This document shows positions 4,001 through 25,754 of a stretch of 64,000 nucleotides of DNA, piece after piece. Position numbers and translations under genes: made by a program. Each line of letters opens with the position of its first letter. Within the stretch, counting starts at the first letter, position 1. The stretch lies in the NCBI GenBank assembly GCA_964270895.1, contig OZ185440.1. One strand, 5' to 3'. This DNA is from Podarcis filfolensis (taxonomy: Eukaryota). The notes beneath the pieces were generated by a model that worked only from the letters and a program-made list of their open reading frames with translations, was not told the DNA's origin and did not search any database.

Positions 4001-5263
4001 TCAACTTAGGCAACAGAACTTGTGCACAAGGATGTATTTTGAGCAACTGCCTCTGAGGAAGGTGGCTACACTTGAAATGTCACTTACTATACCTACATGG
4101 TGGGCTACATTCTTCTTACTATAAACAGCTTCACATAGCCCCCTTTGAAGTTCATCTCTCTCACCTTTCCGGTGCTGTTCTGCTTCCCCCACCCCCACCC
4201 CGAAAGTGGCAATGGAGGCCACATTCTAGACAGAACTTAATTGCACATCTAAGTCCCTGCTTGAACTGGTTCCTTTCGGCTCAGTGCGCATCTAAGCCAA
4301 GGTTTGGCTTAGCATGTTTGTTCAAATCAGGGCTTGTGGTTATTACTGAGGACCCCCTATTTTTCAAAAGCCAAGCAAATCAGAAGGAGTTGAGGTTGGA
4401 TGGGTGCAGGGAGGAGCGGAAGCAGAGTCCCCTCCACCACATGGGTTGAGTGGGAGAAGATGGAAGTGCATCAAGCTGCTGTCAGTGGGGCAGCCAGCGA
4501 AGCTGCATGTCCACTGTGGCTGCTGCTGCTTTTCTGCTACTGAGAAAAGCTGCTCCACCTCAGTGCCAGGGGCAGGTAGTGCCACAGTGCCTGGAAGTGA
4601 AGGGTGATCAGCTGCCCCATTCTCTGTCAGCCTGTGGGAAGGCAGCTCATATCAGCAGTGTTATCAGCTAGGATCATTGTGCGATATTGGTGGTGCCTTG
4701 AAATTAGCTGCTCTGTTCTCCCTCGCGCGAGGAGTGATATATTGCCAAGTCAAAATTGTTATCGTGATGTGATTTCAAAACTGATTTTGGCCAATACAGT
4801 ATATTGAAAAATTGCACACTGCTAAAACAGACCATAAAATATGTGGTATTACCATGCAAAAATGACAAGGAAATAGTTGGAGGGAAGGCAAGGGATGGGG
4901 CCACAAATCCCATGGGTGCATTCCGTGGATTCCCAGGGGTCCCCGGACCCCTAATTGGGAACCACTGGCCTAGAACAAACCTTGATGACAGCATATGGGG
5001 GAAGGAGGAGAGAGCTTAATCAGAAGCTCTGGTTCAAACGGCATGCTAGACCAAATTTTGGTTTAGCTGTTATGCCACGCTGAGCTAAAAGGACCCAGGA
5101 GGAGCAAAACTGCTATAGTTCCCTTCCTGAGATCCTACACATTCATGCTAAGCCACAGTTTAGCTTCGTGTTAATGTCACCTGTGTTTTGAACCCAGGAG
5201 TACCACCCACCAATTTTATTTCTTCATTGAGTGGGCATGCATTCAACTGTCACAATTTCTTAA

Positions 5264-5512
<249 letters not shown>

Positions 5513-8299
5513 TGAGCTAGATTTGCTCACAGTTGTGGCCTGCAACATTGGAATGTTCCTTCTCCTAAGCACACAACATGCTCCAGAGCTAAGAAATTAT
5601 GGGACAGTTTTCAAGGAAACATGATAGCCAGTCATTTGTTCTGTTCTCCATAAGAGTAAAAATCAGTTGAAATTCTTTGGAAGATCCTGAGATAGGCATG
5701 ACTGCATGAGCAGGCCAGCTACTAACTAGCCATGCTTTCAGGCACCCACCCAAGTAGAAAGGGAAGATGCTAAAATACTGCTTCAAAGATGGAAGAGGGA
5801 CCTGATGCAGAATGGAACTGTACAAATTAGTCTCCACTCCTATTAACACCTGGCAGCTTTTTGTTAAGCAGCAATATAATGAACTTATCTGTATGGCAGT
5901 TAATTAACACCCTTAATCCCCTCAGACTTCTTTCCTAACTTTCTTAGTCCTCAGTATGCTTTGTTGGAAAAAAATAATGTAAAGTTTGTATTGCTGTCTT
6001 GATTTAAAAATAAACAAACAAATGCATAAACATGAATTTTAGTTCATCATTCTGAGCACTATAAATGTTGGTTTTCTTACTTTGAAAAAAAGTTTAAAAC
6101 CAGGTGAAAAAAATGAACTTTGTAGTGTAGAAGAGGGAATTTTACCCGCTGAAGTTCCCTGTTTAATGGTTGTGTAAAACAGGAGTTTTTGTATAAAGGA
6201 GTTCTGTCTTTTTTCACCTGGACACTCTGTTTAAAACCCTGCTGTCCTGAAATAGATGTTACTTCAGCATATCTTCAGAGTACATGCAGGAGAGGATCCA
6301 TAGGTGGGGGGTATTTAAGCTGGTGGCTGCTTTCCAGGAGCCAGCCCTAGACATTTTGCTGCCTGAAGCAAAGGACAAGATGGTTCCTTCCTATTTAATG
6401 TACAAAGTCAGTAGGGCTGGCAGGTGATGGATCAGCATTGTCCACCAGACCTGAGGGCACCAGGCAGACCACGTGTCCTACAACAGAGTGGAATGAACAG
6501 GGTCTTGGAAGGAATGGCAAGCGAGAGAGTTGATGCCACTGGCCCCATAACCCAGCATCTGCTGCCTCACTCTACTGTTTCCCTGTGGTTTGTTACCCTG
6601 TCCAGTAGGTTTAGTTGGGGTGTCAAGAGGAGAATTTTGGTGATAGATCTGCCAGCCCAGCTTTACAGAGGTAGATTTGTTCAAATTTTCTAATTTGAAC
6701 AAATCTACTTTTGTAAAGCTGTTTTATCTTTTCTTTCAGGGGGAGGGAAAACATCAACATTTAGGCTGCAATCCTGTGTGCACTTACCATGGAGCAAGCC
6801 TAGTTGAACTCTGTAGGGCTTACTTCTGCATAGGCATGCATTGCACTGTTATTAAGCTTTCTGATCGATTTCATTGTAATTTTTTTTAAAAAATCAAACT
6901 CTCATTCAGAAATAAGGTGCAGTAGATTTTTGGGAGATCAACAGCCGAGTCCTCAAAACTGTCATTTCCAAGATAATGGGAATTTATTCTCACTTCTGTG
7001 TTTTTTTTCCCTTTTGAATAGGAAATGTATGGTAAATGTGTGCTTCCATGCAATTAACATGGCTAGTCTATTTTACTGACTCATGTTTAGTTGCTGCCTT
7101 TTCACTGTAGAGACCCTTACAGAAAACAGTTAAAAGCAACATTATAAGAAGTATTAACATTAAATAATTGCAGTATAAAAAATGCAGTTAAAAACATTTA
7201 AATCCAATTAGCTCAAAGACCACAGCCAGGTCTGACGGAAGAGGGACGTTTTTCTCAATCGTCTGTAAATCCCAGTAGTGCTTAATCCCACTCTGCTAAA
7301 GAAGTTGTCCCTTCCTATGCTTTACCTCAGCATGACTAATCATAAAAAGGGGAAAGTATTTCTCTTCCTGTACAAATACCTTGGAGACACATAGCACTTT
7401 GGGCATGCAAAGTGTTAGCTAACCCTCATACACTTCACCGCTCACTGACATGATACCAGGTCACAACCCAGGCCTCAAGAGGCAACTGGCTTGGGTCTAC
7501 AGCTGTGTTCAACATCAGGGCCTGTTTCCCTCTCCAAATCAGCAGCTGTAAGTTCTCCCCTCCCTTCTGGCTGGGGAAGGCAGCTGCTAACATGTGATGT
7601 AGTGCAGGTGTTTTATTCTGACTGCGTAAGGCCTGGCCCTAGGGAAGCTGGGCGTGTGTTAGGAGTTGAGGTGGGAAGAGTTGCTTTATGCTTAGGTTAT
7701 GGCCCCTTTCATCTCCATCCAGGTTCTGCCTTCATGGCTTTCTTTTTATGAGTTTGTGGCAATTAGGTTAATGAAGCCAATGACGTAAACATGAAGCCAG
7801 TAGGCTGACTGTGGCCAACAGACTGTGCCTTCCAGCGCCAGTGAACTTCCCTTTAGGAAAAGAATAGGTGGCCCTGGCATCTCCCTCAGCAAAGACTCTA
7901 CTGGGAAAGCATATTTTCTGCTTGTGGTTACTTCTGAGCATCTCACTGGGAAAGTGGCAGTGGAAAACTTGCAAACTCTCTTCCCATTCCCAGCCCTTTT
8001 GCTCCATTTGGGGTTCTTGTGTCAGCCCTGAGATTCAGCCCTTTTACTTGTATACAAAGTTGAGGAATGTGTTGGCCCTAATCTTGTGACGCACTCCCAA
8101 GCTGATACTTCTGTCCTAATTAGTCAGAAACGATTTCCACCTTTCCTCCCCTCCCCAGTTCTGTACTTGTAGTCACTGGCATGGTTTAGAACCACTTTTT
8201 CACTCATAAACATTATGTACTAAAAGGATGGGGGAAAGATCCCTTTATTCAGACAGGCAGATAGGCAGTTTTTATCCCAGCATTCCTCCAAGGAGCTCA

Positions 8300-19369: not shown

Positions 19370-20421
19370 CTCTTGCTACAGGATTTTTAATCTTCTGTCC
19401 CCATTTTTCTACTGCATTTGAAGCCTTATTCAATTCCATTCCTCAGTCCTATGGCCTGTTCCCTTTTCTATTCCCACATAAGCTCTTGGAGGTTTTCAGC
19501 TTTGATTTCAGTGACACTTGCAGGAGAAGGAACAGTTGACAAAGAACTGGGATGTGAATAGAGGTTATTTGTGCTGCTTTAGTATAGCACTTAACCCATG
19601 TGCAGGGCCATCATCAGTACTTAGTATCCTTGGGCAACTGCCAAGGCCCTGATACCCTAACAGAGCCCACCACTGATGTTGTGGTCCTGTCCATAAAGTG
19701 TTCACCTGATTCCAAAGGCTGAATAATATACACATTGGGACATAAGTTGTCACATTAGCTTAAGGATGTAAGCTTGCAAAACGGGAACTCTCCCCCACTC
19801 CCACCACTGTGTGCAGCCTATGCTCTTCCCAATTCTCCCCTGGAGGGTTGTGGAATCCTCTAAAACAGATTTAGGGGGTACATGGGAGGTGATGGATGGG
19901 GACATTCCATTGCACAAGTGGAAATCTTTGGACTGGCAGACTGAGTTAACTTACCACTGCATCAGATGCAATCCCTGGCTGATTGGGGACTTTTTAAGTA
20001 CTCTTCATGCATTTAGCTTTGGCTCACTCTCCCTCTGGCAAGGCATATGTGATCTCACTCATGAATGGCTCCCACAAGGCTGTGAGCCATGAGAATTTGC
20101 TCAGATTATCCACACTCTGGCACCATCTGTGCTCCTTTTATGTGCTTGTATTGCACTGGGATTCTTTGGTGGGTTGTTTATTCTTTCTGAATGGAAATCA
20201 TGGGGGTGGGGAAACATAGTAACGGGTTCTGGCCAAAACTGGGCTGCTTTCATCCATATGATTGATGGGCAAGATCAGGCATGGGCTAATCTTTCAAAAA
20301 TACATTTGGGGTTTGGGCTGGGCTGGGCTGGGCTTACAAATACAGGCCCATGCAGGCATACATTTAGAAATATCTGGCCACAGGCCTCCGCTGATTACGA
20401 CTTGATTATTTCTCTTTGCAG

Positions 20422-20514
20422 AGTCTGACAATAGCTACACAGTGAGCTGCGGTACCCCAATATTGCGGCAGGGACCTCCACCGAGGCCCAGCAATGTCAG
20501 CCATCCCTGTGTTG
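20422..20514 (+). CDS. SCUBE3: SCUBE3 exon 12, spacer
   Basis: ttgcag|AGTCT...GTTG|gtaagt; 93 nt; ESDNSYTVSCGTPILRQGPPPRPSNVSHPCV; not in the ORF track (no Met). Confidence 0.9.
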
Positions 20515-20598
20515 GTAAGTTTGGTCTCCTGAGTCCTCAGGGCTCCTCCCGAGACTCGCTTGGCTCCCCTGATACTTAGCACCTGCCTTTTCTTTTAG

Positions 20599-20715
20599 AG
20601 ACTGTCACTGCTCCAATCAAACAAAAGGCTTCCTTCAAAATCAAGGATGCTAAATGTCACCTGCACCCACGCATGAAAGGCAAGCAGGATGAGGTGGGCA
20701 GGAATGCTGCACTAG
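20599..20715 (+). CDS. SCUBE3: SCUBE3 exon 13, spacer
   Basis: ttttag|AGACT...CTAG|gtgagg; 117 nt; [39 protein letters not shown]; preceded by an 84-nt intron. Confidence 0.93.
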
Positions 20716-21163
20716 GTGAGGTACTCCCTCCTTTGTATGTCTTCTCAAAGCCTTCCCTTGGGGTTGTTTTCAGTCCTAAGTCTTGTATGTCACGAAAGCA
20801 GCTCTTTGGATTTAGCATGCAGTCCTTGTAAGCATTCTCTTGTGATGCTTTTAAGGACCAGGGGACTGTGCTTTCCACATTTGCCATAGTTGAATACTGC
20901 AACTATTAAAAACCAGCCACACACAGAGGGAGCTTGAGGCTCTGGGGGTCAAGTCTCCCTGCACTCACTCATGGGCATGTGGTTGGGAAGCTGTGGAATA
21001 GCTGAGGCTTTTATGCTTTTGTGCCTTTGAATGTGTAAGAGCCCAGAAGCAGAAAAGAGAGGATAGAAGGATGAAAAGAACCCTAAGCGTGGGGGCCCTC
21101 CCCTCCACAGAGGATGATGTAGTGCGGAGGAAAAAACTGATAGCAATAACACCACAAATGGCT

Positions 21164-21365
21164 AGGTAGCCGTGTTGGTCTGCCATAGTCAAAACAAAAA
21201 ATTTTTTTTTCTTTCCAGTAGCACCTTAAAGACCAACTAAGTTAGTTCTTGGTATGAGCTTTCGTGTGCATGCACACTTCGTCAGGTATCTGACGAAGTG
21301 TGCATGCACACGAAAGCTCATACCAAGAACTAACTTAGTTGGTCTTTAAGGTGCTACTGGAAAGA
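21164..21365. mobile_element. Penelope-like element remnant with inverted pseudo-LTR arrangement, very young
   Basis: 13-bp TSD ACCACAAATGGCT (21151-21163, 21366-21378); perfect 77-bp inverted arms 21209-21285 / 21290-21366; GTAGCCGTGTTGGTC and TAGCACCTTAAAGAC segments resemble reptile Penelope ends as recalled; hammerhead core present. Confidence 0.8.
21285..21324 (+). ncRNA. Minimal type I hammerhead ribozyme motif (Penelope-type)
   Basis: Helix I GGUAU(21285-89)/AUACC(21320-24); CUGACGA 21290-96; helix II GUGUG/CACAC; GAAA 21312-15; palindromic AGCU helix III; U16.1-C17 cleavage site after 21319. Confidence 0.75.
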
Positions 21366-21579
21366 ACCACAAATGGCTGTGTGGGATTGTATCATTGGGA
21401 AGTCGTGCCTGAGAAAGTGCCTTAGCTAGTGTGGGGAGGTTATGGGAGTAAAACGATGAGCTTCCTGCCACGGGATAAAGGAGAGAAGCCCTGCTTGGTT
21501 GTCACAGAGGAAAATGCCTGTTAGGATTTCAGAGAGAGCTTGCTTGGAGGATATTAACACCGCGCCCCATCTTTCCTAG

Positions 21580-21741
21580 GTGGGGCAGCCCCTTGCTCAG
21601 ATTGCCAGGTGACATTTGTGAACTTAAAGTGTGATTCATCCAAGAAGGGCAAAGGACGCCGTGCCCGCAACTCCCCCAACAAGGAGGTGACTCGCATCAC
21701 GTTGGAGTTTGAAGCTGAAATCAAGCCTGAAGAAATTACAG
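21580..21741 (+). CDS. SCUBE3: SCUBE3 exon 14, spacer with basic furin-type cluster KKGKGRRAR
   Basis: cctag|GTGGG...ACAG|gtagag; 162 nt; [54 protein letters not shown]. Confidence 0.94.
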
Positions 21742-21962
21742 GTAGAGAAGGTGACTGAGAAAGCTTGGCTTTCCCCTCAGAGATAGGGGACAACATCACA
21801 GAGTAATATGAGGAAGAGACCTCATGTTCCAGGAACACCCATCTCAGAAGAGAGTACAAGAGAAGGACTGGTTGACCCAACTTTCCTAAATATTGTTAAA
21901 AGATTGTTTAGAAAAGGCAATGTCTTGTTTTATTTATGCATACACACACTGTCATAAATATA

Positions 21963-22316
21963 GTAAAGGTAAAGGGACCCCTGACCATTAGGTCCAGTCG
22001 TGGCCGACTCTGGGGTTGTGGCGCTCATCTCGCTTTATTGGCCAAGGGAGCCGGCGTATAGCTTCCGGGTCATGTGGCCAGCATGACTAAGCCACTTCTG
22101 GTGAACCAGAGCAGCACACGGAAACGCCGTTTACCTTCCTGCTGGAGCGGTACCTATTTATCTACTTGCACTTTGACGTGCTTTCGAACTGCTAGGTTGG
22201 CAGGAGCAGGGACCAAGCAATGGGAGCTCACCCCCTTGCGGGGATTCGAACCTCCAACCTTCTGATCGGCAAGTCCTAGGCTCTGTGGTTTAACCCACAG
22301 CGCCACCCACTTCCCT
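21963..22316 (-). mobile_element. Full-length Sauria-type tRNA-derived SINE
   Basis: 13-bp TSD TGTCATAAATATA (21950-62, 22317-29); minus-strand head GGGTGGCGCTGTGGGTTAAACC, B-box GGTTCGAATCC, (ACCTTT)n tail. Confidence 0.9.
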
Positions 22317-22831
22317 TGTCATAAATATATACATACACAAATTCATTGAAATGAATGGACATGATTACTAGCTTAGGCCCATTCATTTTAGTGGGTATAC
22401 TTAGTTGGATACAACTTTATAATATGACGAGTTCTTTAGTTCATAACATCTGGGGGTGGGGCGATGAGGTTGAGGAAATTTGAAATATATGAAGCTTCCC
22501 TTTTCTGACTCAGACCATTGGTCTGATTTATCCAGCATGGTGCACTCTGTTTGGAAGTGGTTCTGCTGGGCCTCAGACAGAGGTCATTCCCTGTTCCACT
22601 ACCTGAGATCCTGTTAACTGAGGATGCCTGGGATTTCAGCCAGAATCTTCTGCATGTAAAATGTGTGCTGTACTACTGAACTACGGCCATTCCCCTAGCA
22701 TGAGACTGGAATAGATTATGCTGATTTAACAGCAGCTGGAAATAAAAAGGGACATAAGGTTGTCTTTGGAAATGGGGTTTCTTCTTCCTAGTGCTAGGTT
22801 AAACAGCACAGTCTCATTCCCTCATCTCCAG

Positions 22832-25397: not shown

Positions 25398-25542
25398 AGA
25401 ATCATAGAATCAGAGAGCTGGAAGGGCCACAAGGGTTATCTAGTCCAACCCCCTGCAACGAAGGAATATTTTTGTTCATTGTGAGGCTTGAAGCCACGAC
25501 CCTGAGGTTAAGAGTCTCATGCTCTGCCAACTGAGCTATCCA
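25398..25542 (-). mobile_element. tRNA-Lys(CUU)-headed SINE with CR1-type 3' tail
   Basis: Minus strand GATAGCTCAGTTGGCAGAGCATGAGACTCTTAACCTCAGGGTCGTGG then GGGGTTGGACTAGAT...ATTCTATGATTCT; related tails near 46650-46745 (+) and 35043-35110 (-). Confidence 0.75.
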
Positions 25543-25754
25543 TGTTCAGCCAGTGTTACTATGCACCTTAGTGCTCCTGCTCAATTTGCCTTGCATCCTT
25601 TCAGTGATATTCATCAAGCCTTCTTGCACGATTAGAGAAAGCAATGTTACCAGCAAATTAACTGCCCCAAATAGCTTTTCATTTCCATGAATGCTTGCTG
25701 GTCTTGTATTATTTTGGCAGTCTCTGACACTTTTCTCTTCTCTTCAATGTATAG

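What the first reader, a model, noticed from the sequence alone, without database searches (positions are those of the whole stretch)
21151..21378. Intact minimal hammerhead ribozyme on the SCUBE3 pre-mRNA strand, masked inside a perfect 77-bp palindrome (Penelope-like insertion)
Seen: a 202-bp insertion with a perfect 13-bp TSD (ACCACAAATGGCT) in SCUBE3 intron 13. Arms 21209-21285 and 21290-21366 are exact reverse complements around a 4-nt spacer (GTAT). The + strand from 21285 reads GGUAU-CUGACGA-A-GUGUG(CAUG)CACAC-GAAA-GCU-C^AUACC, giving the complete hammerhead core, a perfect 5-bp helix I, helix II, and helix III reduced to the palindrome AGCU, with predicted cleavage after C21319. The mirror copy on the - strand has a broken helix I (GAUAC vs AUACC). 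Established: Penelope-like retroelements carry minimal type I hammerheads in their pseudo-LTRs, with a palindromic helix III that functions as a dimer, and often insert with an inverted end; other intronic hammerheads have been domesticated in amniotes. Inference: the complete copy faces the host transcript but should be sequestered by the 77-bp fold-back and lacks a tandem partner, so the inverted architecture may be what makes a sense-strand ribozyme tolerable in a gene. The hairpin is also a candidate ADAR/Dicer substrate and a cruciform-forming site. Zero arm mismatches suggest a very recent, possibly polymorphic insertion.
Basis: partly seen in the sequence, partly recalled or inferred. 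Interest (0 to 1): 0.85.

Follow-up and report, generated by a model that had tools for sequence, protein, structure and literature searches.

The report
Young palindromic Penelope-type retroelement insertion
This is one very recent copy, still absent from some chromosomes, of an abundant short lizard retroelement of the Penelope type; it landed head-to-head in a SCUBE gene intron, and its "hammerhead ribozyme" is an inherited family motif that is almost certainly inactive here.

Summary
A 202-bp insert (21164-21365) lies between perfect 13-bp target-site duplications. It contains a perfect 77-nt inverted repeat around GTAT. The + strand carries a formally complete Penelope-type minimal hammerhead (21285-21324, predicted cut 21319/21320).

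The anatomy is the known signature of Penelope-like element (PLE) integration:
- a 126-nt copy on the minus strand that ends at the family's canonical 3' end;
- an abutting inverted 76-nt 5'-truncated copy;
- a 45-nt "tail" at one end only.

The perfect + strand helix I is a by-product of where the inversion junction fell. It is not a family feature.

In the transcript every base of the motif pairs with the opposite arm; helix I pair probability is about 1e-41. Published PLE hammerheads do not cut as monomers anyway. Masking therefore explains nothing, and head-to-head insertion is a published PLE hallmark that other scan notes also report across this genome.

Contigs from three DNA runs, one with flanks identical to the window, join 21150 directly to 21366, which is the empty site.

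No Rfam hammerhead model matches. This scan has already noted the same kind of element about 88 times elsewhere in this genome. Verdict: ordinary, low interest.

The parts
21151..21163 (.). Target-site duplication, left copy (ACCACAAATGGCT)
   Evidence: contigs of X1, X2 and X4 carry a single copy of this 13-mer joining 21150 to 21366
21164..21289 (-). Longer, native-orientation copy of the short PLE-type element (126 nt on the minus strand). It starts ATACCT and ends GCTACCT, which suggests one unit of about 120 nt plus a 5-nt terminal redundancy.
   Evidence: many other genomic copies end exactly at 21164 (loose ends before 21163)
21164..21208 (-). 45-nt 'tail' present at this end only, including a variable A/T run
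   Evidence: Absent from the right arm. One-sided 30-40 bp tails are a PLE hallmark. The PAc tail of about 34 nt lies between the two RT start sites.
21251..21289 (-). Minus-strand min-hammerhead core with only 4 native nt upstream; no helix I in this context
   Evidence: MFE -6.6 kcal/mol, helix I absent
21286..21289 (.). Hairpin loop GTAT, the reverse complement of the ATAC that precedes the core on the minus strand
   Evidence: TAC also precedes CTGAAGA in another copy (X4 letters in table 5c)
21290..21365 (+). Inverted, 5'-truncated second copy (76 nt, no tail), in the sense of the SCUBE transcript
21285..21324 (+). Formally complete min-hammerhead: helix I 21285-89/21320-24, core 21290-96, bulged A 21297, helix II 21298-21311, GAAA 21312-15, GCUC 21316-19, predicted cut 21319/21320
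   Evidence: pair probabilities in context are about 1e-41 for helix I and about 1e-19 for helix II
21366..21378 (.). Target-site duplication, right copy
21609..21741 (+). Next exon of the host SCUBE-type gene (spacer region), 243 nt downstream of the insert
   Evidence: AG|GTGAC acceptor, ACAG|GTAGAG donor; gene architecture by Pfam; low + sense RNA coverage

Best explanation
A single, very recent retrotransposition event placed a short non-autonomous Penelope-like element into a SCUBE-gene intron of a squamate. The element is pLTR- or retrozyme-type, with a unit of about 120 nt, and is very abundant in this genome. The PLE machinery made staggered nicks 13 bp apart, which gives the TSD. The top-strand 3' end primed a cDNA from the distal RT start site. 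That cDNA is the arm with the 45-nt tail, 91 nt after the ribozyme cut site. The second arm starts 46 nt after the cut site, near the proximal, tail-less boundary. It was made in one of two ways: by priming from the other DNA strand, or by the first cDNA folding back and being copied. I cannot separate these two and rate them about even. Either way the result is a head-to-head palindrome. Each arm carries the family's minimal hammerhead. The perfect helix I on the + strand exists only because the sequence just upstream of the core (AUAC + C3) equals the sequence just after the cut site (AUACC), so inverting it at that point creates GGUAU. In SCUBE pre-mRNA the region folds as one 77-bp hairpin and the ribozyme fold is not populated. 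The motif has no role for the host gene. Shown: the anatomy, the empty allele, family abundance and transcription, and the fold. Inferred: the order of steps, the identity of the mobilising PLE, and inactivity.
For: TSD, arms and motif. Family membership and canonical 3' end at 21164: tens of thousands of contig pieces lie on 21164-21365 only, and other copies' flanks diverge exactly at 21163/21164. Both arms carry C at core position 7 (21294 and 21281), where other copies have A in 83% (21294) and 98.5% (21281) of the summed depth in X1 and in more than 99% in X2 and X4. With 77/77 identity this points to one source. Empty-site contigs join 21150 to 21366 in X1 (0 mismatches over 1370 nt), X2 and X4. 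Inverted 5'-truncated copies and a one-sided 30-40 bp tail are published PLE hallmarks. The Anolis PLE protein cleaves and extends both DNA strands and starts RT at two internal sites whose spacing is the tail. In that element the two ends lie about 55-59 and 89-93 nt after the cut site, against 46 and 91 nt here. All four motif features that Cervera & de la Pena list as emergent are present: the extra base between positions 9 and 10.1, G10.1-C11.1, the palindromic 15.2-16.2 pair, and a long helix II. The hairpin dominates at every transcript length. Monomers are inactive in vitro, and the PAc ribozyme needs its protein.
Against: No autonomous PLE or second family copy lies in the window, so the link to a PLE reverse transcriptase rests on architecture and the motif, not on homology. 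The tail is 45 nt rather than 30-40. The proximal end is 46 nt from the cut site rather than about 55-59. The native upstream sequence (TAC) is supported by only one other contig and by the terminal redundancy. No run was shown to contain the filled allele, so its frequency is unknown, including whether the reference animal is heterozygous. No cleavage data exist.
Confidence: 0.85

Rival explanations
1. One reading: the sense-strand ribozyme is catalytically competent, and the inverted arm was retained because it masks the ribozyme and so makes the insertion tolerable in the gene.
For: The + strand motif is formally complete with a 5-bp helix I, and the hairpin does sequester it.
Against: Monomeric PLE min-hammerheads show no detectable cleavage, and even dimers are slow. 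The PAc ribozyme needs the element's protein, and no cleaved ends are seen in vivo. Inverted copies are generic to PLE integration, including clades without hammerheads. The insertion is polymorphic and too young for selection to have shaped it. Other scan notes report solo sense-oriented intronic copies in this genome (unverified).
Confidence: 0.04
2. Assembly artefact: the palindrome, or the whole insert, is a long-read fold-back or chimera error and does not exist in the animal.
For: Perfect palindromes are a known read artefact. All three DNA runs examined show the empty site, including one with identical flanks. No filled-site contig was seen among the pieces listed.
Against: A perfect 13-bp TSD, an end exactly at the family's canonical 3' terminus, and PLE-typical tail asymmetry are signatures of real transposition, not of a read chimera. 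Short-read contigs cannot traverse a 77-bp perfect inverted repeat of a high-copy family, so their silence on the filled allele is expected.
Confidence: 0.05
3. Two independent insertions of the same family into the same site, one in each orientation.
For: PLEs tend to insert into or next to earlier copies.
Against: A single TSD pair brackets the whole structure. The arms are 77/77 identical and share a minority core variant. The empty allele removes both arms plus one TSD copy at once.
Confidence: 0.03
4. The hairpin has been, or will be, co-opted as an intronic hairpin-RNA, miRNA or ADAR substrate that affects SCUBE expression or silences the family.
For: It forms a 77-bp perfect RNA duplex. 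Rfam miRNA precursor models give sub-threshold hairpin-shaped hits. The family is transcribed in both senses.
Against: All miRNA hits are far below gathering scores and reflect shape only. No small-RNA or editing data exist. The allele is not fixed.
Confidence: 0.03

Closest known systems
Minimal hammerhead motifs of metazoan Penelope-like elements (Cervera & de la Pena 2014, PMC4209133; Lunse, Weinberg & Breaker 2017, cited in PMC6765202)
   Same: CUGANGA / GAAA / C17 core; an extra unpaired base between positions 9 and 10.1; G10.1-C11.1; helix III reduced to a 4-nt palindrome (AGCU); 5-bp helix II; short helix I. Abundant as solitary and opposite-strand pairs 100-700 bp apart or closer, and reported in reptiles.
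   Different: The helix I seen on the + strand is created by the inversion junction, not inherited. No tandem partner is present. Activity is untested.
Poseidon_Ac (PAc) of Anolis carolinensis (Frangieh et al. 2024, PMC11167929)
   Same: Same ribozyme layout (CUGAGGA-U-helix II-GAAACGUC). Ends of genomic copies lie at two sites downstream of the cut site (about 55-59 and 89-93 nt there, 46 and 91 nt here), separated by a 'tail'. Both DNA strands are used as primers in vitro, which can explain head-to-head copies. Target DNA is AT-rich.
   Different: No sequence similarity outside the core. This element is about 120 nt, has no ORF, and must be mobilised in trans. The tail is 45 nt rather than about 34.
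Complex tandem/inverted PLE insertions with a one-sided tail (Evgen'ev & Arkhipova 2005; Craig et al. 2021, PMC8557442)
   Same: An inverted 5'-truncated copy abuts the 5' end, an extension is present at only one end, and a TSD brackets the whole structure.
   Different: The scale is miniature (202 bp), made only of pLTR-type sequence.
Animal non-LTR retrozymes (de la Pena et al. 2020, PMC7229834; bioRxiv 10.64898/2026.07.22.740005)
   Same: Short non-autonomous hammerhead-bearing units related to PLEs. Reptile families average 176 bp, and monomeric derivatives are common.
   Different: Retrozymes are defined by tandem arrays. This locus has one unit plus an inverted partial unit, and only a 5-nt terminal redundancy hints at a multimeric template.
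L1 twin-priming inversions (Ostertag & Kazazian 2001; from my own knowledge)
   Same: Both target-strand 3' ends may prime cDNA synthesis, which gives a 5' inversion inside one TSD pair.
   Different: In twin priming the inverted piece is the neighbouring upstream part of the RNA. Here the two arms duplicate the same segment and form a true palindrome.
Conserved intronic hammerheads of amniotes (Rfam HH9/HH10; de la Pena & Garcia-Robles 2010; from my own knowledge)
   Same: A type I hammerhead in an intron, in the sense of the host gene.
   Different: Those are canonical, monomer-active and conserved across species. This one matches no Rfam model, is masked, and is not even fixed.

Membership tests
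PLE minimal hammerhead (Cervera & de la Pena 2014) | Conserved core: C3U4G5A6N7G8A9, G12A13A14, A15.1-U16.1, H17 | tested here: met
   CUGACGA ... GAAA GCU C at 21290-21319 on +, mirrored on -. N7 is C here and A in most family copies.
PLE minimal hammerhead (Cervera & de la Pena 2014) | [quoted passage not shown] | tested here: met
   A21297 is unpaired; G21298 pairs with C21311.
PLE minimal hammerhead (Cervera & de la Pena 2014) | Helix III reduced to a short palindrome (15.2-16.2) that can pair only in a dimer | tested here: met
   AGCU at 21315-21318. In cofold, however, two isolated motifs prefer a 14-bp intermolecular helix II duplex rather than the AGCU dimer.
PLE minimal hammerhead (Cervera & de la Pena 2014) | Helix II of 5 bp or more and helix I of 4-5 bp | tested here: met
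   On the + strand, helix II is 5 bp plus a CAUG loop and helix I is 5 bp. On the - strand helix I is absent.
PLE minimal hammerhead (Cervera & de la Pena 2014) | Resides in the terminal repeat of a Penelope-like element | tested here: inconclusive
   PLE-type insertion hallmarks are present: inverted 5'-truncated copy, one-sided tail, TSD, and a canonical end shared by many copies. No RT/GIY-YIG ORF or homology to a named PLE could be tested, because the window has no other copy and there is no similarity to Poseidon_Ac outside the core.
PLE minimal hammerhead (Cervera & de la Pena 2014) | Self-cleavage, as a dimer or with element protein | not testable with these tools
   This needs in vitro transcription. 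One RNA run showed no pile-up of read ends at the site, but those reads come from many copies.
Rfam hammerhead families (type I/III, HH9, HH10, II) | Match to a curated covariance model | tested here: not met
   No hammerhead hit at E up to 10 on 20900-21650 or at gathering score on the whole window.
Domesticated (exapted) intronic hammerhead | Fixed in the species and conserved in relatives | tested here: not met
   The empty site is present in contigs of three runs under three organism labels, one with identical flanks.
Non-LTR retrozyme | Tandem head-to-tail repeats, each with a hammerhead | tested here: not met
   The locus has one unit plus an inverted partial unit, and no tandem repeat. 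The TACCT redundancy at both ends of the 126-nt copy is only a hint of a multimeric template.
L1-type twin-priming inversion | The inverted segment is the adjacent upstream part of the template, not a duplicate | tested here: not met
   The arms are exact reverse complements of the same 76-77 nt.

The most novel reading that the evidence does not exclude
The head-to-head insertions of this family may be in vivo footprints of the two-strand, two-start-site reverse transcription so far seen only in vitro for the Anolis PLE, with one arm beginning at each RT start site. If so, the family would scatter perfect long hairpins through expressed introns. Those hairpins could feed RNAi or ADAR pathways and act as a built-in brake on the family.
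Probability: 0.15. Interest if true: 0.5.

Novelty: new member of a known kind. Interest (0 to 1): 0.2.

Why it matters
The main value is as a clean negative. An eye-catching "intact ribozyme in a developmental gene" turns out to be an ordinary copy of a known kind of element, and its perfect stem is an accident of the junction. Two modest positives remain. The empty allele shows that PLE-type retrotransposition is ongoing, or was very recent, in this lizard lineage. The arm ends (with and without tail) also fit the two RT start sites defined biochemically for an Anolis PLE, so a genome-wide census of such palindromes could test that in vitro model in vivo. A 77-bp perfect palindrome 243 nt upstream of an exon is also a plausible site of assembly trouble and genomic instability.

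Tried and rejected
- Rfam, region at E up to 10 and whole window at gathering score: no hammerhead family matched. There were only sub-threshold miRNA-precursor-shaped hits that reflect the hairpin.
- Search for further family copies in the window (blastn word 7, and a structure-aware motif scan): none. Two loose CTGANGA...GAAA matches at 4053 (+) and 5954 (-) lack the family features and look like chance.
- Exact and gapped pattern scans of metagenome contigs (two scans) and viral contigs: 0 hits, then 34 microbial chance hits, none with CTGAN upstream. No family consensus could be built, so the native helix I could not be established.
- Comparison with the Poseidon_Ac consensus: same ribozyme layout, no sequence homology.
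- Lunse et al. 2017 is not held in the library.
- Findings look-up by sequence gave nothing.
- Read-end analysis at the cut site and A-to-G differences in the RNA run are uninformative for this locus, because nearly all reads on the element come from other copies.
- Not attempted: paralogue assignment (SCUBE3 against SCUBE1/2) and intron numbering, which did not justify a large database search.

Full report
**1. What is in the sequence**

- The 13-mer ACCACAAATGGCT occurs at 21151-21163 and 21366-21378 and brackets a 202-bp insert (21164-21365).
- Positions 21209-21285 and 21290-21366 are exact reverse complements around GTAT. The last pair uses the first base of the right TSD.
- On the + strand, 21285-21324 reads GGUAU / CUGACGA / A / GUGUG-CAUG-CACAC / GAAA / GCUC / AUACC, so the predicted cut is between 21319 and 21320.
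- The 35-nt core-plus-flank occurs exactly twice in the window, once per strand, against 0 expected.
- The insert folds as one hairpin: -154.8 kcal/mol as RNA (z = -26) and -99 kcal/mol as DNA (z = -27).

**2. Host gene**

Open frames on the + strand carry a calcium-binding EGF domain (about 18.1 kb), three Ephrin_rec_like cysteine repeats (23.4, 24.6 and 25.7 kb) and a CUB domain (26.2 kb). A SCUBE-like C-terminal exon lies near 29.9 kb.
- The next exon after the insert is 21609-21741, with normal splice signals, so the insert ends 243 nt upstream of a 3' splice site.
- The few RNA reads on unique flanks have their first mate on the minus strand, which fits a + strand gene.
- I did not verify the paralogue or the intron number.
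- A tRNA-headed SINE of the squamate type at 21963-22316 marks the genome as a lizard or snake.

**3. The insert belongs to a very abundant family, and the minus-strand copy is the native one**

When contigs of three DNA runs were laid on 20400-22100, tens of thousands of pieces landed on 21164-21365 only. The flanks had single-copy depth.
- Flanks of other copies diverge exactly at 21163/21164, so 21164 is the family's canonical terminus. On the minus strand this is the 3' end ...CAACACGGCTACCT.
- Read on the minus strand, the copy is 126 nt (21289 to 21164) and begins ATAC-CTGACGA.
- TAC also precedes CTGAAGA in another copy (X4 letters, table 5c). The 'spacer' therefore appears to be element sequence.
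- The 126-mer starts ATACCT and ends GCTACCT. This is a TACCT terminal redundancy. It suggests a unit of about 120 nt copied from a more-than-unit template, as is usual for Penelope-like elements.
- The + strand copy (21290-21365, 76 nt) is an inverted, 5'-truncated duplicate that lacks the last 45 nt.

**4. This architecture is the published signature of PLE integration**

Craig et al. 2021 describe PLE insertions as highly 5'-truncated. [quoted passage not shown]

Frangieh et al. 2024 studied the Anolis PLE protein.
- It nicks and extends both DNA strands.
- It starts reverse transcription at two internal sites, and the interval between them is the tail.
- In that element the tail spans about nt 85-119 and the ribozyme cut site is at about nt 26-30. 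Copies therefore end about 55-59 or 89-93 nt after the cut.

Here the two arms end 46 and 91 nt after the cut. The fit is good for the distal end and approximate for the proximal one; the tail contains a length-variable A/T run.

Both arms are antisense cDNA attached to a target 3' end of a 13-bp staggered break. This is the geometry expected if both strands primed. It is equally the geometry expected if the first cDNA folded back and was copied, and the 4-nt loop favours that version. Notes from other windows of this genome mention spacerless palindromes folded at other points, which would also favour fold-back, but I have not checked them. I leave this sub-question open at about even odds.

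**5. One event, very recent, not fixed**

- The arms are 77/77 identical.
- Both carry C at core position 7 (21294 and 21281). Other copies have A there in 83% (21294) and 98.5% (21281) of the summed depth in X1, in more than 99% in X2 and X4, and in 357 of 359 RNA reads at 21294.
- In each of X1, X2 and X4, one contig runs from 20400 to 21150 and continues without a break at 21366. It skips 215 nt, which is the insert plus one TSD copy.
- With 31-letter words, such a contig requires reads that span the empty site.
- X1 has no mismatch over 1370 nt of flank. X2 and X4 differ at 9 and 10 sites.
- The empty allele therefore exists in the same species or population and in close relatives.
- I could not show the filled allele in any run. 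Short-read contigs cannot cross this palindrome, so its frequency is unknown. An assembly artefact is not formally excluded, but the TSD and the canonical end make it unlikely.

**6. The ribozyme motif**

All features that Cervera & de la Pena 2014 list as defining or emergent for metazoan PLE min-hammerheads are present:
- the core boxes;
- an extra base between positions 9 and 10.1;
- the G10.1-C11.1 pair;
- a 4-nt palindrome in place of helix III;
- a longer-than-usual helix II (5 bp, against the canonical 4) and a short helix I.

Poseidon_Ac of Anolis has the same layout with unrelated helix sequences. No Rfam hammerhead model matches, as expected for a motif without helix III.

It has a trivial cause. 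Natively the core is preceded by (A/C)UAC, which with C3 reads UACC. It is followed after the cut site by AUACC. Inverting the upstream AUAC·C at exactly this junction yields G·GUAU, the perfect complement of AUACC. The native upstream sequence (GGCUAC, if the terminal redundancy is read through) offers only an interrupted 2+2 bp helix I.

**7. Will it cut?**

Almost certainly not.
- In the transcript, every right-arm base pairs with the left arm at every simulated transcript length.
- In the full insert the helix I pairs have probability of about 1e-41 and helix II of about 1e-19.
- The antisense arm is transcribed first, so there is no kinetic window.
- Single PLE min-hammerheads show no detectable cleavage in vitro, and dimers cut slowly.
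- The Anolis PLE ribozyme cuts only when its protein is added, and no cleaved ends are found in RNA-seq.
- Two isolated copies of this motif prefer a 14-bp intermolecular helix II duplex in cofold rather than the AGCU dimer.
- In the one RNA run examined the family is transcribed in both senses, with no pile-up of ends at the cut site. These reads come from many loci.

**8. Masking for tolerance**

This idea is not needed and not supported.
- A monomeric motif has no activity to neutralise.
- The inverted structure is produced by the integration mechanism, and it occurs in PLE clades without hammerheads.
- The allele is too young to have been filtered by selection.
- This scan has about 88 notes on Penelope hammerheads in this genome. 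About 20 describe head-to-head palindromes in other introns, and others describe solo sense-strand copies. These are unchecked AI notes, used only as leads.

**9. Verdict**

This is an ordinary, well-preserved, polymorphic insertion of a known kind. Its interest lies only in being evidence of recent PLE-type activity and a possible in vivo footprint of the two RT start sites.

Noticed in passing
window 21950-22329: A tRNA-headed squamate-type SINE (body 21963-22316, minus strand) with a perfect 13-bp TSD TGTCATAAATATA (21950-21962 and 22317-22329), in the intron just downstream of exon 21609-21741. It is extremely high copy and transcribed in all runs, with CpG-type variant positions. The single-copy contigs of X1, X2 and X4 run into its first 21-22 bases (to 21983/21984), so unlike the PLE insert it is present in all three.
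   Followed up: partly
window 25475-25545 (-): An Rfam tRNA hit just above the gathering score (30.2 against 29 bits), about 150 nt upstream of the Ephrin_rec_like exon at about 25.7 kb. It is probably another SINE head or tRNA-derived relic rather than a tRNA gene.
   Followed up: no
window 21294 / 21281, in runs X1 against X2 and X4: The C variant at hammerhead position 7 makes up about 17% of summed contig depth at 21294 in X1 (organism A) but under 0.5% in X2 and X4 (organisms B and C). This hints at a young CUGACGA subfamily expanding in organism A only. Depth sums are noisy, and the mirror position 21281 shows only 1.5%.
   Followed up: no
window 21190-21210: The A/T run inside the element's tail is length-variable among family copies: (CAAA)n variants and 6-nt deletions appear in RNA reads. 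This part of the element behaves like a microsatellite.
   Followed up: no
window 4053-4085 (+) and 5923-5954 (-): Two loose CTGANGA...helix...GAAA matches to a generic min-hammerhead descriptor, without the family's flanks or a palindromic helix III. They show that the bare descriptor hits by chance about twice per 64 kb.
   Followed up: partly
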